The notes: generated by a model not told the origin, from the sequence alone. 64,000 bases of DNA from Octopus sinensis (GCF_006345805.1 NC_043016.1:12152001-12216000), one strand, 5' to 3'; shown: positions 3,701 through 59,659, numbered from the stretch's first letter. Numbers and translations are program-made.

Positions 3701-3804
3701 ATATGAAGACGAAAAAAAAAATTGCACCAAGATTTAATACTAAATTAGGGATGTGATTTATATGAGTGTGTGTATAGAATTATGTATATGTATATACTTA
3801 TCTG

Positions 3805-7079: not shown

Positions 7080-7376
7080 CACATCCGAATCGTGGCCGAT
7101 GCCAGCGCCGCCTCGACTGGCTTCAGTGCCGGTGGCATGTAAAATGCACCAATCTGACCGTGGCCATTGCCAGACTCCCCTGGAACCTGTGCAGGGGGCA
7201 TGTAAAAAGCACCCACTACACTCACGGAGTGGTTGGCGTTAGGAAGGGCATCCAGCCATAGAAACACTTCCAGATAAGACTGGAGCCTGGTGCAGCCTCC
7301 TGGCTTCCCAGATCCCCGGTCGAACCATCCAACCCATGCTAGCATGGAGAACGGACGTTAAACAATGATGATGATG
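7080..7376 (+). mobile_element. RTE-tail copy. Others at about 5840-6030(-), 15137-15380(+), 38644-38930(-), 45785-46200(-), 49590-49815(+), 58180-58322(+), 59180-59480(-) and 63190-63450(+).
   Basis: Shared GAGTGGTTGGCGTTAGGAAGGGCATCCAG core and GAT tail. Confidence 0.85.
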
Positions 7377-10257: not shown

Positions 10258-10689
10258 TATAGTGATTTCCCCTCACGCCACTATGTTTATACATTCCATC
10301 TATCTATTATGTTATAAGCCATCAGGGCCCATTGATGATGTCTTGCATTTGCAAGAACATGGTTAACAGATTATGAGGTGTCACTTTGCATTAGAAGTAA
10401 TTTGTTATTTGAGTGGACACGAAATGAAAGACACAATGTGCCAATGGATCTGAGAATTGAACCCACAATCTTACAATCATGAGGTTGAAAACGTTTTGTT
10501 TTTTAATGATATTACCAAATTCAAATACACACGTACCAATTACAGTTTGACCGAAACAGGTGAGCCACAAAGTTCCAGTCGGATCTGGCAGTGTTTCTAT
10601 GGCTGGATGCCCTTCCTAACGCCAACCACTCATAGTGTAATGGGTACCAATGCCACATAAAATACAAATTCAAATACACACGTACCAAT

Positions 10690-12489: not shown

Positions 12490-13318
12490 GACACTACAAA
12501 TGTACAGAAAATAGACTCCATCAAATGCCAATGGAGTAAGCTAGAGGTAGTTGATAGTTTTCGTTATCTAGGTGACCAAGTCAGTAGTGGAGGTGGATGC
12601 TCCGAGAGCATAACTGCTAGAATAAGAATAGGCTGGGCAAAGTTCAGAGAGCTCCTACCTCTGTTGGTAACTAAGGACTTCTCCCTCAGAGTGAAAGGTA
12701 GACTGTATAATGCCTTCGTGTAAACAACCATGCCACATGGCAGTGAAACAGGGGCTGTGACTGCAGAGGACATGTGAAGGCTTCAAAGAAATGAAGTCAG
12801 TATGCTTCGCTGGATGTGCAATGTCAATGTGCATGTATGACAAAGAAAAAAACTGGGCATAGGCGGCATTAGATGTGGTGTGCAAGAGAGACGAATGTGC
12901 TGCTATGGTCATGTGATGGGTATGGACGAGGTCAGCTGTATAAAGTGCCGAGCTCTAATTGTGGAAGGAACCTGTGAAAATGGTAGGCCCAGAAAGACAC
13001 GGGACAAGGAGGTGAAGCATGATTTTCGAATGTTGGGCTTCATAGAGGTGATGACAAGTGACTGAGTGAGACCTTTGGCATAATGCTGTGAAATAGTAGT
13101 AATGGCCATTCTCAGTGTCATGTGAATGGCACCCATGGAACTGTAGTCGTGGCCAATGCCACATAAAAAGTACCCATTACACTATGAGTGGTTGGCGTTA
13201 GGAAGGGCATCCGGCCATAGAAACACTGCCAGATCCGACTGGAACTTTGTGGCTCACCTGTTTCGGTCAAACTGTTTAACCCATGCCAGCATGGAAGGCA
13301 GACATTAAATGATGGTTT
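12490..13318 (+). mobile_element. RTE LINE 3' fragment with 3' UTR and GAT tail
   Basis: LEVVDSFRYLGDQVSSGGGCSES...RIRIGWAKFRELLPLL...GRPRKT, running into the abundant ...GGAAGGGCATCC...CATTAAATGATG tail. Confidence 0.9.
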
Positions 13319-18184: not shown

Positions 18185-19140
18185 ATTATTATTATTATTC
18201 CTGTTTTGTCCCTTTATGTAATCATGCGTGTCAGCCCTTGTGGCCAATAAAAAAGAATTGATTATTATTATTATTATTTTACACGATTTTTTCACAAACG
18301 GACAAAACCCTTTGCAACCTTTCGTCCTGTTTTGTCCCTTTATGTTTTCTAATCATGTGTGTCAGCCCTTGTGGCCAATAAAAAAGAATTAATTATTATT
18401 ATTATACGATAGGCTTCAAGGGACTGAAATTTGTAGAGAGGAGAGGTTTGTAAAGTAAATAAAACTGACGCTGCTGGTACTTAACTGGTATTTATTTTGC
18501 TTTGCGGTATTTCGTCTGCCGTTATGTTCTGAGTTCAAATTCCGCCGAGGTCGACTTTGCCTTTCATCCTTTCGGGGTCGATTAAATAAGTACCAGTTAC
18601 GCACTGGGGTCGATGTAATCGACTTAATACCTATGTCTGTCCTTGTTTGTCCCCTCTGTGTCTAGCCCCTTGTGGGTAATAAAGAAATAGGTAGTTATTT
18701 TGATGACCCCGAAAGGATGAAAGACAAAGTCGACCTCGGCGACATTTGAACTCTGAATGTAAAGCGGAATGATGATAATAATAATAATATTGAAGATGAT
18801 TTCAAATTTTGGCACAAGGCCAGCAATTGTCCCCTCTCTGTAAAACTTTTATGGCGAATAAAAAAACAGGTACTCAATTTCTCGACCCCGAAAGGATGAA
18901 AGGCAAAGCCAACCTCAGCGGCATTTGAACCCAGAACGTAAAGACGAACGAATAATAATGATTTCTGTTATAGGCAGAAGACCTGAAATTTGGTAGGAGG
19001 GGACTAGTCGATCACATAGCCACCACCACCATCCCTAGTGCCTTACTGGTACTCAATTTATCGACCCCGAAAGAATGAAAGGAAAGGTCGACCTCGGCGG
19101 AAGTTGAACTAAGAACGTAGCGGCAGGCGAAATAATAATA
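18185..19140. mobile_element. Cluster of SINE pieces (GAGTTCAAATTCCGCCGAGGTCGAC family) in both orientations. Other copies at about 14680, 30820, 31495, 34660, 36070, 47720 and 55960.
   Basis: Repeated CCCCGAAAGGATGAAAGGCAAAGTCGAC motif and (AAT)n tails. Confidence 0.8.
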
Positions 19141-21039
19141 ACAATAATCTGAATCAAGTACAAGCTACAACTAAAAAAATTGGTGTGCTCGCACACATCT
19201 ACAAATTTTTGAAATAATTGTACCTGTTTTTTTTAATCTACACCTTCTGAAAGGTATTTTGCAGAAAATTTCATTTTCTCATAACTTTTAGAAGAAAGTG
19301 TATTTTTATACCCTTCCTTCTAAAAGTTGTGAGGAAGTGGGGGACACACTTATTGCAAGTTGCCTTGCGTTTTACGTAGGTAAATTTTAAAATTTATTTT
19401 ATTATTGTTAAAATTAGACTAAAAGAAAATTCAGAAATTAGTAAATTTAACAGGTTCTTCTCTTTTATTCCAACTTCTTCCACTTCGGAAACGATTCGTG
19501 TTTCTTTTAGCAATTTGGAAAAACAAATGAAACTTTATCCACCTTTATGAGTGAAGCAGACTAGGGTAATAGAACAACGCAATTAACTTATTCTTTATAA
19601 GTACTTTTGAAAAACTAACAGTTTTTCGCTTAATTTTGGAATTTTATATCCGTTTTATTATCAGTCGTTTATGTACAAATTCTTAAAACTAATAATAAAG
19701 TTAGCAATGTTTCGTTTGTGCCATAAATAAAGTTTTGTTTCGTGAAGTGTGGTTACTGAATATAGACTTGGCAAGATAAACAAAATTTTGGAAGTTCCAA
19801 CTTGGATAACTCACTATATTTTCTTCCTTGATTTCTGGAAAGAAAACTCGTAAATTCTGTCCTCATAGTATGCGCACACTATCACTTTCTAAGCGCATGA
19901 TTAGTACACATATGGTCACTCTCACTTCATTTTTCACTCCCTTTAGCAAAGAAAATTGAATTACACTCAAGAATCTATATATTCTTGAAATTTAGAAATG
20001 TCGATTTTTGCCAATTTTTTTGCAGGTTCGTATTCCCTGTAGCCGAAAGGGAGAGGTTTGTGTCGAAAAAAACAACTTTTTAAGGGTGGTTTTTGTGGAC
20101 GGTGGACTGGTATTTATTTTCGATGGTTTGTTTTCCTTGTAGCTCTTTCATGTCACTATTTAAATTATTTTCTTCATCGTTTATATTTGAATATGAATTG
20201 TCAGTTGTTTCTTTTTCTTTTTTCTTTCTTTTTTTACTTTTAATATTATTATCAGGCAGATACATAATTGTCAAGAAGCCTCAGACAAATACTTTGCGTT
20301 ATCAAGTTACTACCCTTTATACTTTGAGTTCAAATCTCGCCTGATTTTCCTTTTATTTAACCGTGGTCGATAAAATAAAATATCAGTGAAATATTAAGTT
20401 ATTTAATCGTCTATAATCTCCCTCAAGATCTATGGGCGACGCTAAGAAGCAGTTTATTTTTCAAAGTTTTGGAAGTTTACTTGAAATGCAACAACTTCTA
20501 GACTTGTAATGTTGCTTATGAAGATGCATCATTCGTTACTTTGGCGCTACCACCTGCCAGAAATCAAGGGAAAAAGTCATTTTTTGAAAATTTTAGCTGT
20601 TAAGTTTGCATTCCAGTTACATGGTCTCGGGTTCAGTCCCACAGCGTGGCACCTTCTACTGTAGAAGACGGGCTTGATTTTTTTTCTGTTTGGTTTCATT
20701 TTCCGAAATTTTAAAATTAAGTGAAATTTTTCAAATTTGGAATATTGATGTAATTTTTCACGTTGAATCTGATGTTATTCATTTGTTCTTGAAAAATTTT
20801 AGAAAAGAGTTACTGAAGTTTAAAGTCTGATAATTTTTGTCTAAGAAATCAGGATTTGGAAGCTAGCATTTTATGCACAATGACACCATTACGACGACAA
20901 AACATTTGATGATTGAAGTTATAATAACTTAAGTCATATAATGCTAAAATTACCCCTCCCCCCAAAATGGTTAAATTACTAAAAAGCAGGTACTTCTTGG
21001 TTATCTCACCTCCATTCAAAAATTTAGTTATCTCCCCCT

Positions 21040-22740
21040 GTAGTGTAGGATACAGCTTAGTCACCTGTATATAATCAAGTTATTTGGGAAAGCACCGTCC
21101 CCAATGACTGGTGTAGCAGTATCATAGTCAGCTGCTGCAAGGGTAAAGGTGATGCCTTATGTAGAAACAACTACAGAGGTATCAAACTGCTGAACCAGGT
21201 CATGAAAGTTACTGAGAGGGTTATAGCACAACTGATAAGAAATAGAATTAAACTAGATGAGATGCAGTTTGGTTTTGTACTTGGGAAGAGTACCATAGAT
21301 ACTATCTTCCTAGTGAGACAGCTGCAGGAAAAGTACTTGGCCAAAAGTAAGCCATTGTACTTAGCCTTCATCGACCTGGAGAAAGCTTTTGACAGAGTTC
21401 CCTGCTCTGTTACATGGTGGTCTCTAAGGAAGTTAGGAGTAGAGGAGTGGCTTGTTAGAGCTCTGCTGTCAGTAAGGTGAGAGTCGGCCATGAATACAGT
21501 GATGAATTCAGCATTCAGGTAGGGGTTCACCAGGACTCAGTTCTCAGCCCACTCTTATTCATCATAGTCCTCCAGGCCACAACAGATGAATTCAAAACTG
21601 GATGCCCATGGGAACTGCTATATGCTGATGACCTTGCTCTTATTGCAGAATCTTTAGCAGAACTGGAGAAGAAATTCCAGATATGGAATCAAAGGACCTT
21701 AAAGTTAACCTAGCAAAGGTCAAAGTTGTTGTTAGTAAGAAAGAAGATAAAACTCTCGTTCTGTCAGGGCCATTTACCTGACAGAACGAGAGTTTTATCT
21801 TCTTTCTTACTAACAACAACTTTGACCTTTGCTAGGTTAACTTTAAGGTCCTTTGATTCCATATCTGGAATTTCTTCTCCAGTTACCTGACAGGTTCAAT
21901 AAGTTGGAAGAAATTCCATTCACTTTACCTAGTGTAAATTATGGACACATAAGAGAATGAATGGAATCACAGGTAGATTAACAGATAAAGTAGTCTTTGT
22001 GTGCAGGAACAATAAGCACTGAGAACCCACAGGACTTAGATTCTCTCAAATGCCCAGGAGGCTCTCTTGAGAATGTAGATAGTTTCTGTTACCTAGGTGA
22101 CCAAATTAGCATTGGAGGAGGATGCTCTGAAAGTATTGTTTCTAGAATAAGAATAGGGTGGAGGAAATTCAGATAGCTATATTATGGTGGGAGGTTTCAG
22201 GTATACCTAAACAAGTGTGTCCCCTCCTGACTTCATTTCCTCATAACTTTCAGAAAAATAGATTTTCCCTTAATGGAATTTATTACAGATGCCTTTCAAA
22301 GGTGTTGATTCTGATTATATTGTAATTTAATGTGGCAACAAGAAGGACTCTCTCTCAGAGTGAAAGGAAGACTGTATGATGCTTGTGTGTGAATGGCTAT
22401 ACTCCATGGTAGTAAGACATGGGCTCTGAATGCAGAAGACGTGTAGACTGAAGAGAAATGAAGGAAGTATGCTCCATTGGATGTGCAACATCAGAGCACA
22501 TGTATGACAAAGTGCAAATCTATTGAGAGAAAAGTTGAGTATAAGAGGAATCAAATGCAGCATGCAAGAGAGAAGACTGCACTGGTTTGGACATGTGATG
22601 CGTATGAATGTGGGCAGGTGCATAAAGAAGTGCCGATCACTGAAAGTGGATGGTACCTGCAGAAGAGGGAGATCCAGAAAGATGTGGGATGAAGTGGTAT
22701 GAACCAATTTCAGGATGATGGGCCTTATGGAGGAAATGAT
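21040..22740 (+). mobile_element. Degenerate RTE LINE covering the RT domain, rearranged internally
   Basis: YRGIKLL, QFGF...STIDTIF, AFIDLEKAFDRV, VGVHQDSVLSPLLF and LLYADDL motifs, with frameshifts, a fold-back and an insertion. Confidence 0.92.
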
Positions 22741-22801
22741 AATAGACCCCACTTCTTTGACAGTATCCTGCCACTTATATTATGACCATCAAACCTCAAG
22801 G

Positions 22802-24165
22802 GTATTCCCTGGCACTTGCCACCATCTCTCTCTCTCTCTCTGTCTTTACTTGACCATTCCATCTATATTCTGATCCCTGTCCATTGTGAGTATGCCCTGG
22901 CAGTTTGCCACCATCTATATCTCTCTCTCTTGCCTTTACTTGACCATTCCATTTATATTCTGATCCCTGTCCATTGTGAGTATTCCCTGGCACTTGCCAC
23001 CATCTATATATCTCTCTCTTGCCTTTACTTGACCATTCCATTTATATTCTGATCCCTGTCCATTGTGAGTATTCCCTGGCACTTGCCACCATCTCTCTCT
23101 CTCTCTCTGTCTTTACTTGACCATTCCATTTATATTCTGATCCCTGTCCATTGTGAGTATTCCCTGGCACTTGCCACCATCTATATATCTCTCTCTTGCC
23201 TTTACTTGACCATTCCATTTATATTCTGATCCCTGTCCATTGTGAGTATTCCCTGGCACTTGCCACCATCTCTCTCTCTCTCTCTTGCCTTTACTTGACC
23301 ATTCCATTTATATTCTGATCCCTGTCCATTGTGAGTATTCCCTGGCACTTGCCACCATCTCTCTCTCTCTCTCTTGCCTTTACTTGACATTCCATTTATA
23401 TTCTGATCCCTGTCCATTGTGAGTATTCCCTGGCACTTGCCACCATCTCTCTCTCTCTCTCTTGCCTTTACTTGACATTCCATTTATATTCTGATCCCTG
23501 TCCATTGTGAGTATTCCCTGGCACTTGCCACCATCTCTCTCTCTCTCTCTTGCCTTTACTTGACCATTCCATTTATATTCTGATCCTGTCCATTGTGAGT
23601 ATTCCCTGGCACTTGCCACCATCTCTCTCTCTCTCTCTCTTGCCTTTACTTGACCATTCCATTTATATTCTGATCCCTGTCCATTGTGAGTATTCCCTGG
23701 CACTTGCCACCATCTCTCTCTCTCTCTCTTGCCTTTACTTGACCATTCCATTTATATTCTGATCCTGTCCATTGTGAGTATTCCCTGGCACTTGCCACCA
23801 TCTCTCTCTCTCTCTCTCTTGCCTTTACTTGACCATTCCATTTATATTCTGATCCCTGTCCATTGTGAGTATTCCCTGGCACTTGCCACCATCTCTCTCT
23901 CTCTCTCTTGCCTTTACTTGACCATTCCATTTATATTCTGATCCCTGTCCATTGTGAGTATTCCCTGGCACTTGCCACCATCTCTCTCTCTCTCTCTTGC
24001 CTTTACTTGACCATTCCATTTATATTCTGATCCCTGTCCATTGTGAGTATTCCCTGGCACTTGCCACCATCTCTCTCTCTCTCTCTTGCCTTTACTTGAC
24101 CATTCCATTTATATTCTGATCCCTGTCCATTGTGAGTATTCCCTGGCACTTGCCACCATCTATAT
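22802..24165. repeat. ~89-bp minisatellite, about 15 units, each with an internal variable (CT)n
   Basis: 16 occurrences of CCCTGGCA(C/G)TTGCCACCATC at 87-93 nt spacing. Confidence 0.97.
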
Positions 24166-24228
24166 CCTGCTGTCTCCCACTTTCTCTCTCTCCTTCACAG
24201 CAGTACATCTGTTTCTGTTTTCATTCCT

Positions 24229-24264
<36 letters not shown>

Positions 24265-26314
24265 CAGCCAAGTAAAGCATGTACCTCCTCTACAGCTAGA
24301 TGCCTGTTTCTGTCTCTCTGTCTCACTATATAATCTTTCATCACCTCCACCACTGCATCTTCCCCTCTCAAAAGAATTTTGTCTTGCAGGTTACTAGGTG
24401 ACCCTGTCAGTGCAGGTGCCACTTAAAAGCATGTAGTCCACACTGTAAAGTGGTTGGCATTTGGAAAGGCATCCAGCTGTAAAAACTATGCCAAAACTGA
24501 CCTCACCTGTGCTTGTACCATGTAAAAAGCACTAAGTTCACTCTACTGAGTGGTTGGTGTTAGGAAGGGCATCCACCTGTAAAAATCCTGCCAAAACAGT
24601 CACAGAAGTCTGGTGCAGGCTTCTTTCTGGCTGGCTCCTGTCAAACTCTCCAACCCATGCCAGCATGGAAAGCAGATGTTAAACAATGATGATGATGATA
24701 ATTGTGGTAGCACAATTTAGGTATTCTAAATAAATGTTAAAAATTATGTTATGCAATATTGAAATACCTTTTAATAATTTTTATTGTAAGGAAAATGGGA
24801 TTTACAATAAATGCCAATGTGTGCCTTATGAATACATTTGAGCACTGTACAGACCAGGCCGAAGGCTGGGAAGCCTGCTAGTATGTACTTAAAATGAAAA
24901 AATAATCTTTTATTTCCTCATGTAAAAATGTTTCTTAGCTTTCCTTCCACCCAGCATTCATGAAATATGCTTCCCCGGTCATCACACACTTTTTTTTAAA
25001 CATCTTTGTAGAAGCAGTAATGAAGACTGACCATTGTAGATCTTCCAAAGACTGATGTGTTCAATACTATTGGTATTCAGTTTAAGTAATTGAATATTTA
25101 CACCTGTATTGTGGTGGGAGGTTTCAGGTATACCTAAACAGGTGTGTCCCCTCCTGACTTCATTTCCTCATAACTTTCAGAAAAATAGATTTTCCCTTAA
25201 TGGAATTTATTACAGATGCCTTTCAAAGCTGTAGATTTTTTTTTATATAGGAATTTAATGTGAAAATTTTGTTCAGGAGTTTAGGTAATTTACATGGATC
25301 AGTTTTGTTTTCTTATAACTTTTTTAGAAACTATCTATTAATAAAATTTTCTACAAATACCTCTCAGGTGGTATAGGTTAGGATTATATCAGAATTTAAT
25401 GTGGAGAAAAAAGATTGGTAGGCCCTCAAACATACACACCAGTACACATCATCATTTAATGCCTGCTTTCTATGCTAACATGAGCTGGATGGTTTGATAG
25501 GAACTGGCAGACTACAACTAATATCTCACTCTGTCATCTGATATTCAGTAAATGAAGGTGAATATTGATTGTAGTCTGTCATCACAAATTTTTTATGAAA
25601 AAGACATTTTTTGGATGAGGGAAAAATGTACATTGAAATTTGAATTGTGAGAAGCACCAGCGAGTTATTCCAATTTTGTGTGTTTTGGGACAAAGGTTAG
25701 AATATTTCTGTCAAAATTCACTGTCTTTGTTTCAATTAATTTTTAAAACAAATTCTTTTATTCTTTTACTTGTTTCAGTCATTTGACTGCAGCCATGCTG
25801 GAGCACCGCCTTTGGTCGAACAAAATGATCCCAAGACTTATTCTGTCGGTCTCTTTTGCCGAGCCGCTAAGTTATGGGTACATAAACACACCAACATCTC
25901 CCTCTCTCCTATACTCCATTCTTGACCCCTCTCTTGTCTGCTATCATTCTCAGTGCCCTTTTATATCTACCTGCAAGCCCTGCTTACTATAGCCCCATGT
26001 GTACCTCTATATCCCCCTCCCTGCTGCTCCTACACTTTGCACATCTTTCTGCTACTTTCTACTCTATTCCCCTTCTTGAACCATTCCTATTTCCGTCATC
26101 TTACCCCTCTCCATTCCATTCATTTCCATCCCCAATTCTAACCGTCTCTTGCTCCCCTTATACACTCTTATGAAACTTCAGAAGTGCAAAATTTTTTTCC
26201 ATTACCTAACTTGGAATGAGATATTGATGGGTGTTTTTGTTCTTTTTTTGTTTAATAAAAAATTTTTGTAGAGTAAAATTTTCATTGTAACTTTTTTTAA
26301 AATTTTGTTTTCAG

Positions 26315-32239: not shown

Positions 32240-32423
32240 GGAAAAATTTGGGTGCTGCTGTAGCTGCAATTGATATGGGTAAAAGTATGGTTCAAGGAGT
32301 TATTAGATTGGTACAGGCTTCACCAAAAACGTGTGTCATCGAAGGAACACTTGATGGCTTAAAACCTGGAGTGCACCGACTGAGCATACATGAATATGGT
32401 GATATCTCAAATGGTTGTAATAG
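32240..32423 (+). CDS. CCS: CCS exon 4 ([G]KNLGAAVAAIDMGKSMVQGVIRLVQASPKTCVIEGTLDGLKPGVHRLSIHEYGDISNGCN)
   Basis: cgcag| acceptor and |gtgagt donor; 184 nt, phase 1-2. Start of the Cu/Zn-SOD-like domain 2. Confidence 0.97.
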
Positions 32424-32829
32424 GTGAGTGTTATTGGGATTAAAACATCCCATAAACTAACGATTCTGTTTTTTACAAATACTTTTAAATTAGAATATAT
32501 TCTAGTGAATTAATAGGGCCAGCTAGTAGATTTAAGAGCAATATTTTCAGATTTCTTAACCATTTAGAAATGAAGTCTCCTGGTGTTTTCTGGGGTTTTT
32601 TTGCTACTGAATATGGAGCCATTTTTATGAAATACAAAAAAGTGTAAGTAGTTCATGAGACACAGGCTTGGCTGTGTGGTTTAGAAGCTTGTTTCCCAGC
32701 CAAGTGATCTCGGGTTCAGTCCTAGCCCAGGTCAACCAAAGAGCTTTGTGAGTGGATTTGGTAGACAGAAAATGAAACAAGCCTATTGTATAAGTATGTG
32801 TTTGTGTGAGTAATTTTGGAGGTACGTAA

Positions 32830-33435
32830 CATAATGGTTAGGGTATTCAGCTCATGGTTGTAAGGTCAGGAACTTGTTTTATGGTGGCACATTGTGTCTT
32901 TGAGTAAGACAGTTTATTTCACGTTGCTCCAGTCCAATCAGCTAGCAAAAACAAGTAGAACCTGTATTTCAAAGGGACAGCCTTGTCATACTCTGAGTCT
33001 TCCTAAGGATTACATTAAGGGTATACATGTCTGTGGAGTACTCAGCCACTTGCACATCAATTTCACGAGCAGGCTATTCTGTTGATTGGATCAACAGGAG
33101 CGTTTGTTGTCACAACTGATGGGGTGCCAGGGGTATCTGGCTCATTATCATAAGGTCATGGGTTTGATATCCAGCAGTTCATTATGTCCTTGAGCAAGAC
33201 ACTTTATTTCACGTTGCCCCAGTCCACTCAGGTGGGTAAAAACAAGTTGTACCTGTAATTCAAAGGGTAAGCCATGTCACAATCTGTGTCTTGCTGAATC
33301 TCCCCGAGAACTACGTTAAGGGTACACGTGTCTGTGGAGTGCTCGGCCACTTGCACATTGATTTCACAAGCAAGCTGTTCCGTTGATCGGATCAACTGGA
33401 ACATGTATTATTGCAATTGACAAAGTGCCAGAGTG
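32830..33435 (+). mobile_element. Two head-to-tail SINE copies (TGTCCTTGAGCAAGACACTTTATTTCACGTTG family). Relatives at 35090-35450(+) and 37830-38140(-).
   Basis: tRNA-like head, CORE-like central motif and a shared GTCTGTGGAGTACTCAGCCACTTGCAC body. Confidence 0.8.
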
Positions 33436-33936
33436 TGGTGAGTAATTTCATGTTTCTCTGCATGTTTTTCACTCACTGGTTTATAAACAATGGCTTCACT
33501 AACAATGTCATTTACTTTTAGTCCACCTCAAAAGCATGTTCCAGCTTCTTGACATCTTTTGATTATGTTCCACAAATCTTTATAAACAAAACACACATTT
33601 TGTTGTCGTATGTCGTCTGTTCTTCATGTGAACATGTCCAAGCTGGTCGTTCTTCATTAGACTTGAAAATGTGTTGCTTCACTTGGAAACCAGTGGGAAT
33701 TGTTGACAGGAAACATATCCAGTCACATTCTGGAGTTTAATCTAAATGTATAAAGTTAGTCAAATTTGGTACAAAAGATCTTTGTTGAAGAATTTTTTTC
33801 TTGCTTTACATAACGGTGTGATAGAATACACAAACAAAATGTTATTCAAAGTTAAAATCCTTACAGAGTATTAAAGGAATTGATGTATTTTCTAATTTCA
33901 CATTTAAAAACACAAAATTATTTTTTGTTATTTTAG

Positions 33937-33979
33937 TTGTGGAGATATTTATGGTCTAAAGCAAAAGTTTGATAAAGAT
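33937..33979 (+). CDS. CCS: CCS exon 5 ([S]CGDIYGLKQKFDKD)
   Basis: ttttag| acceptor and |gtaagt donor; 43 nt, phase 2-0. SCG continues the domain 2 alignment. Confidence 0.88.
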
Positions 33980-35516
33980 GTAAGTTTTATTGAATAATTT
34001 TCTTTATTCTTTCATGAATGAAAAGTATTCTACACAATAAAAGTATGGTTGAATGTTGTGTACTTCTGTAAGTTTTAGTAGACAGTCTCATTTACCAAAG
34101 AATGCAACCTTCCTGTTTCTGCCAACTCACAACCTATTACTTTCCATTCCAACATCTCAAGAATTATGGAGTCATTAACGACCACCATAAATATATCTTT
34201 TCTTTTGCATTTATTGTCACCTAGTAACCATCGTTACCGTTTCCATGCAAACAGATCCACTAAAAGCCCTTTCCTACAATCCATATTAGTTGTCTCTCAA
34301 AGTTAAAAACTTCAGTAGAAGCAATATTGTTGCTCTTAACTTGCATAAATCTTCCAATCTTTGGTCTGCCATGAAAGCTTCTTGGAAAATTTCTTTTCTC
34401 GTGAATTCTGTCTCTGATCTCTTGAACCTGAAGTTTCCTGTCAGACTAATCCTTCTTAGTATCTACAGACTGTGTCTAACCCATGACCTATCAACCTTGG
34501 TCGGCCTTAAGATTACATCTTCCTCATGCTGTACTTGCTGTATCAATCCATGCCTGCTGTTCTGGCCACACATACACACTCATACACATATGATATCACT
34601 TCCATAGATTGGCCGAGTCGTTAGAACATTAAACAAAATACAATATTTATTCTGGCGCCTTAATGTGGCAAGCTGGCAGAATTGCTAGCATACCAAGCTT
34701 AGTGGCATTTTGTCTGTTTTTACATTCTGAGTTCAAATTCTGACATGGTTGACTTTAGCTTTCATCCTTGTGGGGTCAATAAAATAAGTACCAGTTGATT
34801 ACTGAGGTCAATGCAATTTGGGGGGAGGGGACTAGTCGATTACACTGACCCCAGTGCTTGACTGGTACTTATTTTATCAACCCGAAATTGTTGGCCTTGT
34901 GCCAAAATTTGAAACCAGTATTTATTCTCGCACCTTGCGTTCTAGGTTCAAGTCTGGTTGAGCTCCACTTTACCTTTCATTCCCCCAGGGTCAATAAAGC
35001 ACTAGTTTAGGGTGGCAAACTCACAGAAGTATTTATGTTAGGCAGGTGGCTTTCTGGTACTTGTTTAAACTGTTTGTATTCTGAGTTCATATCATGTAGC
35101 TTTTGTGAGTAGTAGATTTTATTTTGTAATGGTTCATGGCTTAGTGCTTAGGGTACTTGGCTCATGATTGCAAGGCCACGAGTTCAATTCTCTGCAGTAT
35201 GTTGTGTCCTTGAGCAAGACACTTTATTTCACCTTGCTCCAGTCCATTCAGCTGGCAAAAATGAGCAATCCTATGATGGCAAAAGGCCAGCTGTGTCACA
35301 TTCTGTGTCGTGCTGAATCTTCCTGTGAAAAACGTTAAGAGTACACATGTCTGTGGAGTACTCAGCCATTTGCACATTGATTTCACAAGCAGGTTGTTCT
35401 GTTGATTGGATCATTTGGATCCCTCACCATCATAACCAACAGAGTGCCAGACTTAATCTACCACCATATTTAACACCACTGCCACCTGGCACCTAGTTTA
35501 TCATTACATTACTGTA

Positions 35517-35852
35517 AGCATGGCTCAGTGGTTAGAGCGTCGAGCTTACAATCGTGAGGTTGTGAGCTCGAATCCCGGACCGGGCTGCGTGTTGTGTTCT
35601 TAAGCAAGGCACTTTATTTCACGTTGCTCCAGTTCACTCAGCTGTAGAAATGAGTTGCGACGTCACAGGTGCCAAGCTGTATCGGCCCCTTTGCCTTTCC
35701 CTTGGACAACATCGGTGACGTGGAGAGGGGAGGCCGGTATGCATGGGCGACTGCTGGTCTTCCATAAACAACCTTGCCCGGGCTTGTGTCTGGGAGGGTA
35801 ACTTTCTAGGTGCAATCCCATGGTCATTCATGACCGAAGGGGGTCTTTACCC
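35517..35852 (+). mobile_element. tRNA-derived SINE with CORE-like domain. Relatives at about 15520-15850 and 55620-55872.
   Basis: TGGCTCAGTGGTTAGAGC A box and GCTCGAATCC B box, followed by the SINE body. Confidence 0.85.
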
Positions 35853-36777
35853 TTACTATAATAAAAGTGTAGGTAGAATTCAAAAGCAAAATTTTGGTTC
35901 ATTAAGAAAAGTCTCCTCCAAGGAAGCAGTCTTGATGGTAATAAGGATGTTTGAAGCCCAATAAACAGTTTTTCTACACACATAAAATTCAAATATCAGT
36001 TTGTTTTAGCAGTTGTTCCTATTTAGTTTATTAAATAAATAAATGTTTTATAAATTTTGTAGTTGCAGCGCTATACATTCTGAGTTCAAATTCCACTCTG
36101 AGGACAGCTTTGCTTTTCGTCCTTTCTGGGTTGATAAAATAAGTACCAGTCAAGCACTGGGGTCAGTGTAATCGACTAGTCCCCTCCCCCCAAATTGCAG
36201 GTTTTGTGCCTATATTAGAAAGGATAAATTTTCTAGTTGCAGGCGTGACTGTATGGTTAAGAGGTTCACCTCCCAATCACATAGTTTTGGGTTCAATCCC
36301 ACTGTGTGGCACCTTGAGCAAGTGCCCTCTATTATAACCCCAGTCTGACCATAGCCTTGTGTGTACATTTTCTAGATGGAAACTAAAAGAAGCCTATCAT
36401 ATGAGTGAGTGTGTGTTTGTGTCTCCTTATCTTGAGATTGTATGATTGTTATAAAAGAACCTTACTGTCATACAAGCAATGTAATTCATTTCCAATACTC
36501 TGGCATGAACATGTCTGGCCATGGAGAAATATTACCTTACATGGAAACAGGTGAGGGTTGGCGACAGGAAGGGCATCTGATTATAGAAAATCTGTCTCAG
36601 GAAACTCTATCTGATCCATGCAAAAATGGAATAGTGGACATAAATGGTGATGATGATGATGATGATGTTGATGGTGATGTCTAAAATTCTAGTGTTTTTA
36701 AAATGTATTACCATTAAATGTGTTAATTATCCATTCATTCACTCAGAATTCACACTGATGTATTTTATTTGTTATAG

Positions 36778-36932
36778 GCTCCTGGCAATCTTGATGTTAT
36801 AAAAGCTGGAGAGACTGGAAGAAGTGACTTCAGGCTGGTCAAAGATAATCTTATCATTTCAGAGATTATTGGTCGTTCCATGGTAATTCATGAAGGAAAC
36901 GATATATCATTTACAGGCAATCCAAGTGATAG
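36778..36932 (+). CDS. CCS: CCS exon 6 (APGNLDVIKAGETGRSDFRLVKDNLIISEIIGRSMVIHEGNDISFTGNPSD)
   Basis: ttatag| acceptor and |gtaaat donor; 155 nt, phase 0-2. IIGRSMVIHE SOD-fold motif. Confidence 0.95.
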
Positions 36933-39712
36933 GTAAATACTTTATTTAGAACTTTAAAATATACATCTTCTGAAGTTTAATCATATTTAATGAATCAGAT
37001 CTGTTGCATTCGTGTACTTTGTCAGTGTTCATCCTTCACATCTTAGGAAAGAGTGTTGACCTGATTGCTCAACTTGCTAGAAAAATAGCCAAACCTCCCT
37101 CAGATCCAACCCTACAGTTGTAAAATACAGGGTACAAAGAATTATGTGGGATAAAACATGCTGTCTGAAGGCCTCAAAGCCTAAACCAATCATATGATTT
37201 AGGATTTTAGGGTTTGTTCCCACTGCAAGACCCTGAAGGATGAAGTTTTTTACTATGATCATGGGCTGACCGAGACTTTGTGAATGAATTGGTAAGAAAC
37301 TGTAAGAAGCTTGTCATTAAACAGATTCCAAAGAAGCAAGTGTTGATGCATGTCAGCAAAACTTTTATGTAGTAAAATTGATAAAAAGAGTACAATGAAC
37401 TTGCCATGAGGAGTGGAATAATCCAAAGTTTCAGACGGATTCCTTCTGGGTGACAAGTTGAAAGGAGAGAAATTAACGAGAGACACAGTAGAGTTTTACA
37501 TCCTCTACTGTTAATTGCACGTAGAATATTGGGTTTAAAAGAACCTTGGATACAAAAAAGTTGAAGGGCAGCCTTCAACCTTTTTTCCCATCTGAAGGTT
37601 TTTAAGCCAATATCCTACATGTTGTTATTTATAGCTTTATCTATTTCGAATTCCATCATAAAAAAATAATTTACTTTATATTTCTCAAAGTTTCTAAAAT
37701 CATACAATATGTGTTGTGTGCACAGACAGATATTTATAATTTACACAGAATTTTATTGTGGTTCATTAACTGCAGTACTCTTACAATAGAGATCAGAAGT
37801 TTTGGTTATGGTAAACCAAAAAGAAACCACTCTTAACATAGTTCTCAGGGAGATTCAGCTGGACACAGAATGTGACAAGGCCAGTCCCTTTGAATTACAG
37901 GTACAACTTGTTTTTACCCACCTGAGTGGACTGGAGCAACGTGAAATAAAGTGTCTTGCTCAAGGACATAATGAACTGCTGGATATCAAACCCATGACCT
38001 TATGATAATGAGCCAGATACCCCTGGCACCCCATCAGTTGTGACAACAAACGCTCCAGTTGATCCAATCAACAGAATAGCCTGCTCGTGAAATTGATGTG
38101 CAAGTGACTGAGTACTCCACAGACATGTATACCCTTAATATGTCCTTTAACTAAAGGACATAAGCAAGTCTATGATCAAAAGCATTCCGGCTGTAACCAT
38201 CTTACTTTTTCAGTCGAGCAGTGTGTTCAAGATTCTATACATCTAGGGGTCCTTTTTAAATTTTTCCAAGCTTGTACTGTGTAATATAAGACAAATTTGG
38301 TTATTTCTAACAATTCAAAGGACCTAGAGTGAAGGTGAGGAACCTTTTTTACTACCAGGAATAAACTAAAAATGCGTGTAGGGACTGGGTATATGTATGA
38401 GAAAAATGATAAATTTGTAATTTTACAAATTCAACGGTGTATAACTGTATATTAGTTTAGGAATTTTTAGAGATGAATCAACAAGTTTTTTCAAATTTAA
38501 CTCTTTAGAATTTAAACTGTTCATGTTCAGCCTAAGCCAGATCAAGCCTCTCATTCTTACCTTTACAATGACATTCTAAAAATAAACAATTACATCATTG
38601 AAATCTCAAAGCTGTGAGATAATGCATTCTAAATTCCAAATAATCATCATCATCATCATCATTTAACGTCCGTTTTCCGCGCTAGCATGGGTTGGACGGT
38701 TCAACCGGGGTCTGGGAAGCCAGGAGGCTGCACCAGGCACCAGTCTGATCTGGCAGTGTTTCTACAGCTGGATGCCCTTCCTAACGCCAACCACTCGGTG
38801 AGTGTAGTGGGTGCTTTTTACGTGCCACCGACACAGGTGCCAGGGGGGTCTGGCATCGGCCACAATCAGTTGGTGCTTTTAACGTGCCACCGGCACGGAA
38901 GCCAGCCAAGGCGGCGCTGGCATCGGCCAATGTGGATAAATAAACATTATATTTGATAGAAAAATCTGAATGTCAAAGGGTTAAAATGGTCATATCTAGC
39001 CAAAATATTCTACCTTGTTTTATGTTCAGGGTAGCCAGATCCAGCCTCTTGCTCTGGTCATATCTAGCCACAATATTCTCCTTGTTTTATGGTAAAAACT
39101 GGCCAGATCTGGCTCCTCACACCTACCTTACAATGTCATTCTAAAGCTAGACAATCACACCATTGAAATCTCAAAGCTATGAGACAATGCATGATTAATT
39201 CAGAAAATTGTGAATAAATGAATATTTGACTGAACAATCTGAATGTTGTGAAGGGTTAAGATACAGATGAGGAGTACCATACCTCTGACAGAGCTTTCTT
39301 ACAATCTGCTTAACTTTCTCATCTTTTCCATGACTATACTTCTAAGAAGCAAACTACCTGTTGTATGTGCTTCCATTGAATTTTGATGCAGTGAAGCTAA
39401 TTCTAGGGCTTTTGTAGACTATCTGTAACTTTACTTATTCTTATATATTATGTCAATGTTGACCAACTGAAATTTTACATCATGTGTGTTGTAATGAGAT
39501 TCAATTTAAATACAAACACCTCTGTCCAGTTAGTATTGAAGGGATTAAAATAGATGCAGGAGTGGCTGTGTGGTAAGTAGCTTGCTTACCAACCACATGG
39601 TTCTGGCTTCAGTACCACTGTGTGGCATCTTGGGCAAGTGTCTTCTACTACAGCTTCGGGCCGACCAAAGCCTTGTGAGTGGATTTGGTAGACAGAAACT
39701 GAAAGAAGACTG

Positions 39713-40798: not shown

Positions 40799-40943
40799 AG
40801 TTGGTTGTGGCGTCATTGCTCGATCTGCTGGACTATTTCAGAATGTCAAAAAGATTTGTGCTTGTGATGGAGTTAATGTTTGGAATGAGAAAGTGAAACC
40901 AGGCAACACTGCTGAGAATGAATTGCCGAATGCTAAAATTTAG
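40799..40943 (+). CDS. CCS: CCS exon 7 ([R]VGCGVIARSAGLFQNVKKICACDGVNVWNEKVKPGNTAENELPNAKI*; domain 3 CxC)
   Basis: tttcag| acceptor; 145 nt to TAG. ARSAGLFQNxKxICxCDG is the CCS signature. Exons sum to 756 nt, i.e. 251 aa plus stop. Confidence 0.97.
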
Positions 40944-41990: not shown

Positions 41991-42550
41991 GATAGATGTA
42001 GGGTAGAGGTAGACCCAGGAAGACATGGGATGAGGGGTCAAGCATGACCTTTGAACGTTGGACCTCACAGAGGCAATGACGAACGGCCGAGACTTCTGGA
42101 GATATGCTGTAACTGCGAAGACCCAACAAATAATGTGAGTTCATGGCTCGCTGGATGACCTGCTGTGCCTACCTTGGATTATAGGGTGACCTACTGTGCT
42201 TGATGAGACCTATTGAGTCAAGTACATCAATATCAAATGGAAATTGTAGTAGTGATACCCGTGCCAGTGGCATGTAAAAAACACATCCGACCGTGGCCAA
42301 TGCCAGCAGTGCTTTGACTGGTGTCCGTGCCGGTGGCACCTAAAAAGCACCAGCCAGTCATGGACGTTGCCAGCCTCCTCTGGCCCCTGTGCTGGTGGCA
42401 CATAAAAAGCACCCACTACACTCATGGAGTGGTTGGTGTTAGGAAGGGCATCCAGCGGTAGAAACACTGCCAGATCAGACTGGAGCCTGGTGCAGCCTCC
42501 TGACTTCTCAGACCCCAGTTGAACCATCCAACCCATGCTAGCTGATGATG

Positions 42551-57844: not shown

Positions 57845-59659
57845 CTGTAAAATATCAAACATAACATACAAAAATAAATAAATGAGAGAGAATACAAAAT
57901 GGAAATCCAATCAGGTGGGAAGTCTACAATTTTTAGCTCATAATCCTACATCCCTTTAGCTGAGTCAGAGTGGGGGTGCCTTGTCTTGTGAGTTACGTGA
58001 TGATCTACACAAATAACAGAAGTCAATAAACCCCATTCATGAACATACAATCATCAACATAATTATATAACCACTAACTGAAAACTTAAACTTATAAAAC
58101 ATTAGCCCATAACTCACTGACATTCAACAATACTCTAGCCAAAATTACTGAATCTGAAATAGGATCCTCCACGCTTTGTGAAATGGCTGGCATTCAGAAA
58201 AGCACCCAGTACACTCTGTAAAGTGGTTGGCCTAAGGAAAAGAACCCACGGCATGGTCCTCTGGCTCATCCATTCCTGCTGAACCACTCAACGCATGGAA
58301 AACAGATGTTAAATGATGATGAGGGGGAAAATTTTAAGAACTCTACATCCACAACTAATGAATAGTTTGGGGGATAAAACGACTACTACTGTTTTAACTT
58401 ATATCACTATAATTTTCACAATTAAGAAATATATCCACTTCCTGGTTGATGAAACACTTCACCACTAATATACAAAGCTGCTGAAATACTTATTAATTTC
58501 ACATTTAGAGCAGTGAATTTCCCCTATATAACCCTTTTGTTAACATATTTCTCCTGAAATATGCTAGCAAAATACATCACTATTAAGCTGGTTTTTGGAA
58601 TGTAAATAAACACAAAATTTTGATGGCAATTCTAAGCCGACTACAGTCTGGGCCCTCATTTCATTTGGTCCATCATTACTAAAGCAAAAACTTTTTGTTT
58701 TCCTCACCAATTTTGGGTTGACAAACTAATAAAAATCACTATCAAAAATGTTTCAGCAAAAGTCTATTTTTCTGTAATGGTATCAATTGAATTAATTTTT
58801 ATGGCTATGTGGTTAAGAAGTTCCACTTCCCAAATATGTAGTTAGAGGTTCAGTTCCACTGTGTGGTATCAAAGCTTTGTGAGTGAATTACATGGAAACT
58901 AAAAAAAAAGCTGCTGTGCATGTGTGTGTGTCTGGGCCCCCTTCTCATAACACTGCGTGATGACTGCAAAAGAAGGCCACAGTCATTGAAGTAGTGTTGT
59001 TCATTCCCAATTTTCTTTGGAAACAGTTGACCACGAGGAAATATTACCTTCATTGGAAGCAGATGCAAAAGGCTCTTGATTATAAAAAATTTTCTCCAAC
59101 AAGTGCTGTTTGGCTCATGGAAGCATGGAAAAATGGACATTAAAAGCAGCAGCACTGGCAGCAATCACAATAAAGTTAATCATCATCATCATCATCATCA
59201 TCGTTTAACGTCCGTTCTCCATGCTAGCATGGGTTGGACAGTTCGACTGGGGTTTGGGAAGCCAGAAGGCTGCACCAGGCTCCAGTCTGATCTGGCAGTG
59301 TTTCTACAGCTGGATGCCCTTCCTAAAGCCAACCACTCCGTGAGTGTAGTGGGTGCTTTTTACGTGCCACCTGCACAGGTGCCAGGCGAGGCTGGCAACG
59401 GCCACGGTCGGATTGGTGTATTTTATGTGCCACCGGCACGGAAGCCAGTCGAGGCGGTGCTGGCATCGGCCACGAGTCGGTCAGATATTCAGTTTCAATA
59501 CTCAAGTTGCTCAATCTCCCACTGACTCGGATAAGCTCATCCTTCAATCAATGTTGAGCAGAGGCAAGAAGTGAAACGACCAAGATCACAAAATATTAGA
59601 TTACCAGCTTAAAAATCAGTTTGAAATTCAACACAAGTATTTTGTGGCTGTCTTGCTGT

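What the first reader, a model, noticed from the sequence alone, without database searches (positions are those of the whole stretch)
33015..38138. 253-bp, 99%-identical inverted pair bracketing CCS exons 5-6 (198 nt, frame-preserving)
Seen: 33015-33267 matches the reverse complement of 37886-38138 at 250/253 positions. The block spans the junction between two tandem SINE copies, so it is not explained by two independent insertions, and identity drops abruptly outside it. Exons 5 and 6 lie between the arms and total 43+155=198 nt. Both boundaries are phase 2, so skipping them keeps the frame. Inference: a recent inverted copy or gene conversion created an intronic duplex that could drive back-splicing to a 198-nt circRNA, or an in-frame CCS isoform lacking half of domain 2, and could also be edited.
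Basis: partly seen in the sequence, partly recalled or inferred. Interest (0 to 1): 0.7.

Follow-up and report, generated by a model that had tools for sequence, protein, structure and literature searches.

The report
Young inverted repeat around octopus CCS exons
In the East Asian common octopus, a roughly 305-bp stretch of intron was recently copied backwards into another intron 4.6 kb downstream, so two exons of a copper-chaperone gene now sit between near-identical inverted repeats; this is an ordinary kind of young mutation, and its effect on the RNA is untested.

Summary
Window 33014-33267 is the reverse complement of 37886-38139 at 251/254 positions. CCS coding exons 5 (33937-33979, 43 nt) and 6 (36778-36932, 155 nt) lie between the arms. 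Skipping both exons keeps the reading frame.

The window is Octopus sinensis (CM016878.1). The right arm belongs to a ~305-bp insertion (37833-38137) that is missing from the same site in O. vulgaris and O. bimaculoides. The insertion is an inverted copy of the junction between two old, 77%-identical tandem SINEs in intron 4. It starts and ends inside SINE bodies, has no target-site duplication and no tail, sits beside a 5-nt target deletion, and shares 5 nt of microhomology at one junction. No other tail-head junction occurs in the 165 kb sampled. It is therefore a local templated inverted duplication. It is not a young composite SINE and not conversion of an older copy.

The abrupt identity drop comes from two mutation clusters inside the copy. 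The predicted RNA duplex is very strong (299 bp, ddG -409 kcal/mol). The likeliest consequence is ADAR hyper-editing. Back-splicing and exon skipping are possible but untested, and octopus circRNAs are reported to be scarce. Three more local inverted templated insertions lie in the same window.

The parts
33014..33267 (+). Left arm (donor), the 99% core. It comprises the tail of SINE copy 1 (33014-33120) and the head of SINE copy 2 (33121-33267), in CCS intron 4.
33268..33323 (+). Continuation of the copied donor segment at lower identity. It contains a cluster of 6 left-arm-specific changes at 33267-33282.
   Evidence: no local template found for the cluster
37833..38137 (-). O. sinensis-specific inserted element in CCS intron 6, about 305 bp: an inverted copy of 33016-33323. 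It equals SINE unit positions 196-311 followed by 1-203, so it is one unit long but circularly permuted.
   Evidence: Absent in O. vulgaris (L002 28180/28191) and in O. bimaculoides (L003 24199/24204). Unit mapping.
37886..38139 (-). Right arm, the 99% core, complementary to 33014-33267.
37838..37861 (-). Right-arm-specific changes near the inner insertion junction: two CpG transitions (37838, 37847) and one dinucleotide change (37860-37861).
38138..38150 (+). Outer junction. TTAAT microhomology is shared by donor and target. Compared with the empty sites, YGGTT is lost and the next few target bases are altered. There is no target-site duplication.
32820..33120 (+). SINE copy 1 of the old tandem pair. 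It is 77% identical to copy 2 and is present in O. vulgaris.
33121..33432 (+). SINE copy 2 of the old tandem pair. O. bimaculoides has a single recombinant copy (copy-1 head plus copy-2 tail) at this site.
32240..32423 (+). CCS coding exon 4. It ends in phase 2 (..AAT AG|).
33937..33979 (+). CCS coding exon 5, 43 nt, 669 nt downstream of the left-arm core.
36778..36932 (+). CCS coding exon 6, 155 nt, ending in phase 2, 953 nt upstream of the right-arm core.
40799..40943 (+). CCS coding exon 7, the last one, carrying the CXC motif and the stop codon.
35144..35450 (+). Monomeric SINE of the same family in intron 5. It is the only competing partner for the right arm (76-87% identity, ddG -113 kcal/mol).

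Best explanation
The window is Octopus sinensis chromosome CM016878.1; window position 1 corresponds to about 12,152,001.

Shown: in the O. sinensis lineage, after its split from O. vulgaris, a ~305-bp piece of CCS intron 4 was copied in inverted orientation into intron 6, 4.6 kb downstream. The copied piece is the tail of one old SINE plus the head of the adjacent one, 33016-33323.

Inferred: the copy was made by a DNA-level templated process, either replication template switching or break repair that primed on the nearby opposite strand. It was not made by retrotransposition, transposition or gene conversion. The two arms are 99% identical over 254 nt. The last ~55 nt of the copy look more diverged because of one mutation cluster in each arm.

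The result is a young, lineage-specific intronic inverted repeat, probably neutral, bracketing exons 5 and 6.

Inferred, not shown: in the CCS pre-mRNA the arms should form a ~250-300-bp near-perfect duplex that loops out 4.6 kb. In an octopus the most likely consequence is promiscuous A-to-I hyper-editing of both arms, which would partly melt the duplex. Low-level exon 6-to-5 back-splicing (a 198-nt circle) or exon 5-6 skipping may also occur. At the DNA level, 254 bp at 99% identity could in principle support recombination that inverts the exon 5-6 segment. Nothing indicates a selected function.
For: Identity of the locus:
- L001 (GCA_006345805.1, CM016878.1:12159980-12202943) equals window 7980-50943 at 100%.
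- The spliced exons are 100% identical to the annotated CCS protein of O. sinensis and O. vulgaris.

Insertion polarity:
- O. vulgaris aligns collinearly up to window 37832 and resumes at 38138, with only about 5-10 nt between.
- O. bimaculoides shows the same empty site.

Local donor:
- The insert's best match is 33019-33319 on the opposite strand. All other family copies match at 75-87%.
- The two O. sinensis arms share 11 states that differ from the O. vulgaris left locus.
- The right arm keeps the O. vulgaris state at 8 sites where the O. sinensis left arm has changed.

Not a SINE insertion:
- The element starts at unit position 196 and ends at 203, with no head-first start, no tail and no target-site duplication. 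There is a 5-nt target loss and TTAAT microhomology.
- The tail-head junction occurs only at the left locus (both species) and in the right element within 165 kb.

Heterogeneous identity:
- There are 3 differences in 254 nt versus 11 in 57 nt, Fisher p = 8e-7.

Same mutational style nearby:
- Three further local inverted templated insertions have microhomology or multi-switch junctions. One of them is shared with the independent O. vulgaris assembly.

RNA-level plausibility:
- The cofold gives 299 intermolecular bp and ddG -409 kcal/mol, against -113 for the best competitor.
- Neither arm has a within-intron inverted partner. The arms lie 669 and 953 nt from the splice sites.

Literature:
- Hyper-editing tracks long near-perfect dsRNA formed by neighbouring inverted repeats, and octopus is an extreme case (PMC5625713).
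- Octopus circRNAs are few, and ADAR is said to antagonise back-splicing (PMC9699675).
Against: - Only one O. sinensis assembly is available and no reads could be inspected, so the insertion is not independently confirmed. A junction-spanning ORF was not on record elsewhere.
- No genome-wide search of O. sinensis was possible, so an unlinked paralogous donor cannot be strictly excluded.
- The template-switch mechanism is inferred from junction anatomy alone. One junction has only 1 nt of microhomology.
- Both breakpoints fall at the same TTAAGGGT motif in adjacent SINE units, giving an exactly unit-length copy. Simple template switching does not explain this.
- The 6-change cluster in the donor arm has no identified template.
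- All three O. sinensis-specific events have no O. vulgaris-specific counterpart in 43 kb. This could be chance (p = 1/8), lineage biology, or something about that assembly.
- No RNA evidence of any kind was examined.
Confidence: 0.75

Rival explanations
1. A young composite (dimeric) SINE: the tail-head block is itself a mobile unit that retrotransposed into intron 6, and the left locus is just another member of that family.
For: The element is exactly one SINE unit long (unit positions 196-311 plus 1-203). SINE dimers are known in other taxa (PMC4758252).
Against: There is no target-site duplication, no 3' tail and no head-first 5' end. Both ends lie inside the SINE body, and 5 nt of target are lost. 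The left tandem is old: it is shared with O. vulgaris and its halves are 77% identical. Yet the insert matches that particular diverged locus at 99%, while other family copies match at 75-87%. No further junction copy occurs in 165 kb.
Confidence: 0.03
2. Gene conversion. An older inverted SINE already sat in intron 6 and was overwritten by the left locus. In a weaker form, the insertion is real, and a later conversion tract of about 254 nt re-homogenised part of it.
For: The identity step is sharp: 1.2% versus 19% divergence. The older inverted pair at 34812-34883 / 36128-36199 is 100% identical in O. sinensis, while its counterpart shows 3 differences in 52 nt in O. vulgaris. That hints that arm-to-arm conversion does happen here.
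Against: The strong form is excluded, because the orthologous site is empty in two species and nothing was there to convert. The weak form does not remove the need for mutation clusters. The unconverted 57 nt would be 19% diverged, about five times the whole O. sinensis-O. vulgaris divergence of roughly 3-4% in these blocks.
Confidence: 0.2
3. An assembly artefact: the inverted copy was introduced while the single long-read O. sinensis reference was being assembled or polished.
For: There is only one O. sinensis assembly. Three local inverted copies are specific to it and none to the O. vulgaris assembly in the 43 kb compared. Two of them are 99-100% identical to their donors.
Against: The CCS right arm differs from its donor at about 13 positions. 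It keeps the ancestral (O. vulgaris) state at 8 of these and has private changes at 4 to 5, which a copy made from the same reads would not show. The junctions carry microhomology and small target changes typical of real events. A similar event is shared by two independent assemblies.
Confidence: 0.07
4. A selected regulatory element: the inverted pair exists because it drives a functional exon 5-6 circRNA or a regulated in-frame CCS isoform.
For: The geometry is favourable. The arms are 669 and 953 nt from the splice sites, have no within-intron competitor, and form a very stable duplex. The 198-nt circle would carry an open, stop-free frame with one in-frame ATG. Inverted repeats flanking circularised exons are the accepted facilitators of back-splicing (abstract of PMC4479058).
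Against: The element is present in one species only and is very young, so there is no conservation to argue for function. circRNAs are few in octopus, and ADAR is thought to suppress them. The skipped protein keeps only 49 of 133 profile positions of the Sod_Cu domain and is unlikely to fold. No skipped isoform appeared among the database hits.
Confidence: 0.05
5. Reinsertion of an excised unit-length fragment. One SINE unit was released from the tandem, for example as a small circle formed by recombination between the two copies or by cuts at the repeated TTAAGGGT motif. It was then captured at a TTAA-containing break in intron 6.
For: The insert is one unit long, with both ends at the paralogous TTAAGGGT motif. 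The empty target site contains TTAA, and the filled site has TTAA at both ends.
Against: The donor tandem is intact in O. sinensis. The element has no terminal inverted repeats, and its ends do not match piggyBac-type termini (sequence). CGGTT is lost between the left flank and the TTAA, so there is no clean TTAA duplication. The other three local events do not involve TTAA. TTAA is frequent in a 37% GC genome.
Confidence: 0.07

Closest known systems
Inverted intronic repeats (IRAlu-type complementary sequences) flanking circularised exons in mammals
   Same: Two reverse-complementary SINE-derived sequences sit in the introns on either side of internal exons, within about 1 kb of the splice sites, with cross-intron pairing much stronger than any within-intron pairing. 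This is the arrangement that facilitates back-splicing (PMC4479058 abstract; Ivanov et al. 2015 as cited in PMC9699675).
   Different: The arms here are not two independent SINE insertions. One arm is a direct local copy of the other, so the duplex is far longer and more perfect (251/254) than a typical Alu pair. The host is an octopus, where circRNAs are reported to be scarce. No back-splice product has been observed.
Template-switch mutations and MMBIR/FoSTeS-type templated insertions
   Same: A nearby sequence is copied in inverted orientation. There is microhomology at a junction, no target-site duplication, a small loss at the target, and clustered base changes near the breakpoints. Sister events in the window show multi-switch junctions. 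The known class is described in PMC7954356 and PMC8421209 (abstracts).
   Different: By its title and abstract, the short-range class in great apes (PMC7954356) concerns events below the kilobase scale, whereas these copies are 52-305 bp taken from 0-4.6 kb away. The unit-length, same-motif breakpoints of the CCS event are not a recognised feature. The mechanism is inferred from anatomy only.
ADAR hyper-editing substrates formed by neighbouring inverted repeats
   Same: A long, nearly perfect intramolecular dsRNA within one pre-mRNA is the class that carries most hyper-editing in all Metazoa, and octopus is the strongest case (PMC5625713).
   Different: Editing at this locus has not been measured. 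Typical substrates are pairs of independently inserted repeats or palindromic transposons, not a templated local copy.
Octopus tRNA-derived CORE-type SINEs (OR2 of Ohshima and Okada 1994)
   Same: The repeat unit is about 310 bp. By eye it has a tRNA-like head and a MIR/CORE-like motif (CCTTGAGCAAGACACTT). Octopus is reported to carry a CORE SINE, OR2 (PMC4758252).
   Different: Family assignment was not tested, because no repeat library was available. Rfam found no tRNA match at E up to 1. The right element is not a retrotransposed SINE copy.

Membership tests
Flanking-inverted-repeat circRNA locus | Reverse-complementary sequences in the introns upstream and downstream of the exon(s) | tested here: met
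   Left arm in intron 4, right arm in intron 6; 251/254 complementary.
Flanking-inverted-repeat circRNA locus | Cross-intron pairing outcompetes within-intron pairing | tested here: met
   Neither arm has a within-intron inverted partner. ddG is -409 kcal/mol versus -113 for the best alternative.
Flanking-inverted-repeat circRNA locus | A back-splice junction (exon 6 donor to exon 5 acceptor) observed in RNA | not testable with these tools
   No RNA-seq access. The supplementary text held for PMC9699675 has no hit for these coordinates or this gene, and the animals profiled there appear to be O. vulgaris, which lacks the right arm.
SINE retrotransposition (including a composite or dimeric SINE) | Target-site duplication flanking the element | tested here: not met
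   The filled site compared with two empty sites shows loss of YGGTT and no duplication.
SINE retrotransposition (including a composite or dimeric SINE) | The element begins at the pol III head and ends in a 3' tail or simple repeat | tested here: not met
   It begins at unit position 196 and ends at 203, both inside the body.
SINE retrotransposition (including a composite or dimeric SINE) | Multiple dispersed copies of the same composite unit | tested here: inconclusive
   None beyond the donor and the insert in 165 kb from four loci. The whole genome could not be searched.
Gene conversion between pre-existing inverted repeats | The recipient copy is present before the event, in outgroups at the orthologous site | tested here: not met
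   The site is empty in O. vulgaris and O. bimaculoides.
Template-switch / microhomology-mediated templated insertion | The insert is a copy of nearby sequence on the opposite strand | tested here: met
   The best and only high-identity match is 33019-33319, inverted, 4.5 kb away.
Template-switch / microhomology-mediated templated insertion | Microhomology at the junctions, no target-site duplication | tested here: met
   TTAAT (5 nt) at the outer junction and a single C at the inner junction; small target loss. With so few junctions, chance cannot be excluded.
Template-switch / microhomology-mediated templated insertion | Error clusters or extra switches near the breakpoints | tested here: inconclusive
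   There are 4 to 5 private changes within 30 nt of the inner junction in the insert and 6 changes in 16 nt in the donor. Two are CpG transitions, and the donor cluster has no identified template.
Cut-and-paste DNA transposon or MITE (for example piggyBac, TTAA target) | Terminal inverted repeats plus a clean TTAA duplication | tested here: not met
   The termini share nothing beyond TTAA, and CGGTT is lost at the left flank.
ADAR hyper-editing substrate | A long near-perfect intramolecular dsRNA within a transcribed unit | tested here: met
   Both arms lie in introns of one annotated gene on the same strand, and 299 bp are predicted to pair.
ADAR hyper-editing substrate | Clusters of A>G mismatches in RNA reads | not testable with these tools
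   No read data available.

The most novel reading that the evidence does not exclude
The CCS pair may be one instance of an unusually active mutational process in Octopus, at least in the O. sinensis lineage: template-switch copying of 50-300 bp from 0-5 kb away in inverted orientation. That process would continually create near-perfect intragenic dsRNA. The 64-kb window holds four such events. Three are O. sinensis-specific and one is shared with O. vulgaris but absent from O. bimaculoides. If general, this would explain why octopus genomes have an exceptionally high fraction of loci able to form long, nearly perfect dsRNA and the strongest hyper-editing signal among animals. Porath et al. 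2017 reported that observation and explained it for frog (a palindromic transposon), and the passages I read give no comparable explanation for octopus. It would also offer a route by which new ADAR substrates arise.
Probability: 0.2. Interest if true: 0.7.

Novelty: new member of a known kind. Interest (0 to 1): 0.35.

Why it matters
On its own this is a young, probably neutral structural variant in an intron, and intronic inverted repeats around exons are well known.

Its value is as a clean natural experiment. Two very close species carry the same gene with (O. sinensis) and without (O. vulgaris) a 254-bp, 99% inverted partner, and everything else is about 96-97% identical. Comparing total RNA from the two species would show directly what one long perfect duplex does to editing, back-splicing and exon inclusion in an animal with extreme ADAR activity.

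The wider lead could matter more. If recurrent local inverted templated insertions are general, they bear on where cephalopod dsRNA and editing substrates come from.

Tried and rejected
- Young composite SINE. Rejected on junction anatomy and on the absence of other junction copies.
- Pure gene conversion. Rejected because the site is empty in two species.
- piggyBac-like TTAA mobilisation. Considered because TTAA flanks the insert and lies in the empty site. Rejected because there are no terminal inverted repeats, no clean duplication, and no TTAA at the three sister events.
- RNA-templated copy of an edited intron. The arm-specific changes are C>T, T>A and AT>CA, not A>G, so nothing supports it.
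- Tandem duplication as the origin of the left SINE pair. Rejected because the two copies are only 77% identical. The single O. bimaculoides copy is a copy-1-head / copy-2-tail recombinant, which fits deletion there.
- Local template for the 6-change cluster at 33267-33282. None found.
- Independent confirmation through a junction-spanning ORF in other public assemblies. Nothing on record.
- Rfam scan of 31-40 kb. No relevant family and no tRNA hit for the SINE head.
- The supplementary text held for the octopus circRNA paper. No hit for this locus, and the study appears to have profiled O. vulgaris animals, which lack the right arm.
- Literature search for octopus together with inverted duplication. 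No paper in the library held both terms.


Full report
**1. The observation**

The repeat finder reports an inverted pair at 33014-33267 and 37886-38139. It is 254 nt long, 99% complementary, with 4618 nt between the arms. A base-by-base comparison gives 251/254, with mismatches at 33046, 33096 and 33218. All other direct or inverted pairs of the same repeat family in the region are 62-89% identical. The pair is therefore real and a clear outlier.

A BLAST of the SINE unit (33121-33432) shows that the right element is unit positions 196-311 followed by 1-203. On the outer side, similarity stops dead at 33013/38140. On the inner side it continues, across a 1-nt indel, to 33323/37829 at lower identity. 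The whole stretch is 311 nt at 95.5%.

**2. The gene and the exons**

Splice-site inspection then gave these coordinates:

| Exon | Coordinates | Length |
|---|---|---|
| 4 | 32240-32423 | 184 nt |
| 5 | 33937-33979 | 43 nt |
| 6 | 36778-36932 | 155 nt |
| 7 | 40799-40943 | 145 nt |

- The spliced product is 100% identical to a 251-aa protein annotated as copper chaperone for superoxide dismutase in O. vulgaris and O. sinensis (P0001).
- Exons 4 and 6 both end two bases into a codon.
- Joining exon 4 to exon 7 stays in frame.
- The skipped protein would lose residues 138-204. It would keep only profile positions 1-49 of 133 of the Sod_Cu domain.

**3. Where the window comes from, and the comparative test**

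The protein is encoded on two public chromosomes. L001 (GCA_006345805.1, CM016878.1) equals window 7980-50943 at 100%, so the window is O. sinensis. L002 is the O. vulgaris chromosome OX597829.1. The O. bimaculoides and Argonauta hians loci were fetched as well.

- O. vulgaris aligns collinearly at about 96-97% up to window 37832. It resumes at 38138 with only a handful of bases between.
- O. bimaculoides shows the same empty site, L003 24199/24204.
- The ~305-bp right element (37833-37137 is not meant here; the element is 37833-38137) is thus an insertion in the O. sinensis lineage.
- The left tandem SINE pair is present in O. vulgaris.
- In O. bimaculoides the left locus is a single copy made of the copy-1 head and the copy-2 tail. 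This fits a recombinational deletion there. The tandem is old, and its halves are only 77% identical.

**4. Source of the insert**

- The insert's only high-identity match is 33019-33319 on the opposite strand. Other family members match at 75-87%.
- In a three-way alignment with the O. vulgaris left locus, the two O. sinensis arms share 11 states that O. vulgaris lacks.
- At 8 of the positions where the arms differ, the right arm keeps the O. vulgaris state and the left arm is derived. At 5 positions the right arm is derived. One of those five, 37831, is better read as a target base at the junction.
- A probe across the tail-head junction finds only the left locus (both species) and the right element in the 165 kb available.
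- The insert is therefore a local copy of this particular old, diverged locus. It is not a member of a young dispersed family. I could not search a whole genome.

**5. How it was made (inferred)**

The three sites read as follows:

| Site | Sequence |
|---|---|
| Empty, O. vulgaris | ...ACCACTC CGGTT TTAATATATTGTTCTTTAAC... |
| Empty, O. bimaculoides | the same with TGGTT |
| Filled, O. sinensis | ...ACCACTC [TTAACATAG ... ACCCTTAAT] ATGTCCTTTAAC... |

- There is no target-site duplication and no tail.
- Both ends lie within SINE bodies.
- Five target bases are lost.
- TTAAT is shared by donor and target at one junction, and a single C at the other.

This anatomy fits a templated, microhomology-primed copy from the opposite strand, either replication template switching or repair synthesis. 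The class is known from PMC7954356 and PMC8421209 (abstracts). It excludes retrotransposition and cut-and-paste transposition.

Two things remain unexplained. First, both breakpoints fall at the same TTAAGGGT motif of adjacent SINE units, which makes the copy exactly one unit long. Second, the differences are strongly clustered: 3 in 254 nt against 11 in 57 nt, Fisher p = 8e-7. Six left-arm changes lie in 33267-33282, with no local template. Four to five right-arm changes lie within 30 nt of the inner junction.

The divergence of that 57-nt stretch (19%) is far more than the whole O. sinensis-O. vulgaris divergence. Time alone cannot explain it, and neither can a later partial gene conversion.

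**6. Predicted consequences (inferred, none observed)**

- Cofolding the two arms gives 299 intermolecular base pairs and ddG -409 kcal/mol. The best competitor, the right arm with the intron-5 SINE, gives -113.
- Neither arm has an inverted partner within its own intron. The cores lie 669 nt upstream of exon 5 and 953 nt downstream of exon 6.
- This is the arrangement that facilitates back-splicing (PMC4479058 abstract).
- The 198-nt circle would have a stop-free frame with one in-frame ATG. That is a curiosity, not evidence of translation.
- Against high expectations, a survey of 18 octopus tissues retained only 296 high-confidence circRNAs. Its authors attributed the low levels to ADAR melting intronic duplexes (PMC9699675).
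- Hyper-editing across animals is concentrated in long near-perfect dsRNA formed by neighbouring inverted repeats, and octopus shows the strongest signal (PMC5625713).
- I therefore rank the outcomes in this order: hyper-editing of both arms is likely, a low-level circRNA is possible, and a meaningful skipped protein isoform is unlikely.
- No shorter isoform appeared among the database hits.
- At the DNA level, 254 bp at 99% identity in inverted orientation could support recombination that inverts the exon 5-6 segment. This rests on general knowledge and was not tested.

**7. The same kind of event elsewhere in the window**

A self-comparison of the window lists four near-identical local inverted pairs. 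A catalogue of indels of 50 bp or more against O. vulgaris and O. bimaculoides shows that they are insertions.

| Event | Inserted copy | Donor (inverted) | Identity | Distribution | Junction features |
|---|---|---|---|---|---|
| A | 37833-38137 | 33016-33323 | 99% core | O. sinensis only | TTAAT microhomology, 5-nt target loss |
| B | 10544-10647 | 13170-13273 | 99% | Absent in O. vulgaris | 17-nt fold-back and 30-nt target duplication |
| C | 34812-34887 | 36123-36199 | 98.7% | Present but shorter in O. vulgaris, absent in O. bimaculoides | 7-nt microhomology TGCAATT |
| D | 21777-21884 | 21661-21768 | 100% | Absent in both other species | Perfect fold-back with multi-switch junctions |

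No O. vulgaris-specific counterpart was found in the 43 kb compared. Three against zero is not significant (p = 1/8). It leaves open chance, lineage biology, or a peculiarity of the O. sinensis assembly.

For the CCS event an artefact is unlikely. The insert has diverged from its donor and keeps ancestral states that the donor has lost.

Porath et al. noted that the fraction of loci able to form long near-perfect dsRNA is exceptionally high in octopus. They explained the same observation for frog, and the passages I read give no comparable explanation for octopus. No paper in the library held both 'octopus' and 'inverted duplication'. This is the most novel reading my evidence allows. It rests on one 64-kb window.

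**8. Verdict**

The 'recent inverted copy' reading is supported and sharpened: the pair arose from a species-specific, local, templated insertion. The composite-SINE and pure gene-conversion readings are rejected. The RNA-level proposals remain plausible but untested, and editing is the most likely outcome.

This is a new member of a known kind, an intronic inverted repeat created by a templated inverted duplication. Its intrinsic interest is modest. It is useful as a natural with/without comparison between O. sinensis and O. vulgaris.

Noticed in passing
window 10544-10663 (donor 13170-13273): A second O. sinensis-specific local inverted copy: 104 nt, 99% identical to sequence 2.5 kb downstream, and absent from O. 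vulgaris. It is followed by a 17-nt fold-back piece and flanked by a 30-nt direct duplication of the target (CAAATTCAAATACACACGTACCAATTAC[A/T]G).
   Followed up: partly
window 21661-21884: A perfect 108-nt palindrome with an 8-nt spacer in CCS intron 1, inside a LINE reverse-transcriptase-like remnant. The second arm (21777-21884) is absent from both O. vulgaris and O. bimaculoides. Its junctions show several template switches.
   Followed up: partly
window 34812-34887 and 36123-36199 (both in CCS intron 5): An older inverted templated insertion with 7-nt microhomology (TGCAATT). It is present in O. vulgaris as 52 nt at 94% and absent in O. bimaculoides. In O. sinensis it is 72 nt at 100%, although it predates the species split, which hints at arm-to-arm gene conversion or a later extension.
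   Followed up: partly
window 33267-33282: A cluster of six changes in 16 nt (one deletion, C>T, G>A, three T>A) is specific to the O. sinensis left arm. The right arm and O. vulgaris keep the older state. No template for it was found in the window.
   Followed up: partly
window 22802-24161: A tandem array of units about 89 bp long, 96-97% identical, lies in CCS intron 1 within a 3.6-kb stretch (21974-25617) that has no counterpart in O. vulgaris. The O. bimaculoides assembly has a run of N there.
   Followed up: no
L003 about 19040-19400 (O. bimaculoides), versus window 32820-33432: O. bimaculoides has a single SINE where O. sinensis and O. vulgaris have the tandem pair. Its head resembles copy 1 and its tail resembles copy 2, with a further 56-nt gap. 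This looks like a recombinational deletion between the two copies.
   Followed up: partly
L002 27621-27981 (O. vulgaris), equivalent to window 37630: O. vulgaris carries its own 361-bp repeat insertion about 200 bp from the empty site of the CCS right arm, so this part of intron 6 has been hit independently in both species.
   Followed up: no
window 33937-33979 and 36778-36800 (CCS exon 5 and the start of exon 6): Compared with human CCS, which I recalled from memory, the octopus and Argonauta proteins have a shortened loop here (SCGDIYGLKQKFDKDAPGNLDV). It lacks the histidines of the zinc-site loop and has N where the human sequence has the aspartate of GDLGN. Octopod CCS domain 2 may therefore not bind zinc.
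   Followed up: no
window 289-702, 2495-2779, 3316-3756, 7001-7345, 42210-42536, 59076-59525: Another very abundant repeat family contains the motif GGATGCCCTTCCTAACGCCAACCACTC and gives spurious long ORFs (...LDALPNANHS...) on both strands. The donor of the 10.5-kb event belongs to this family.
   Followed up: no
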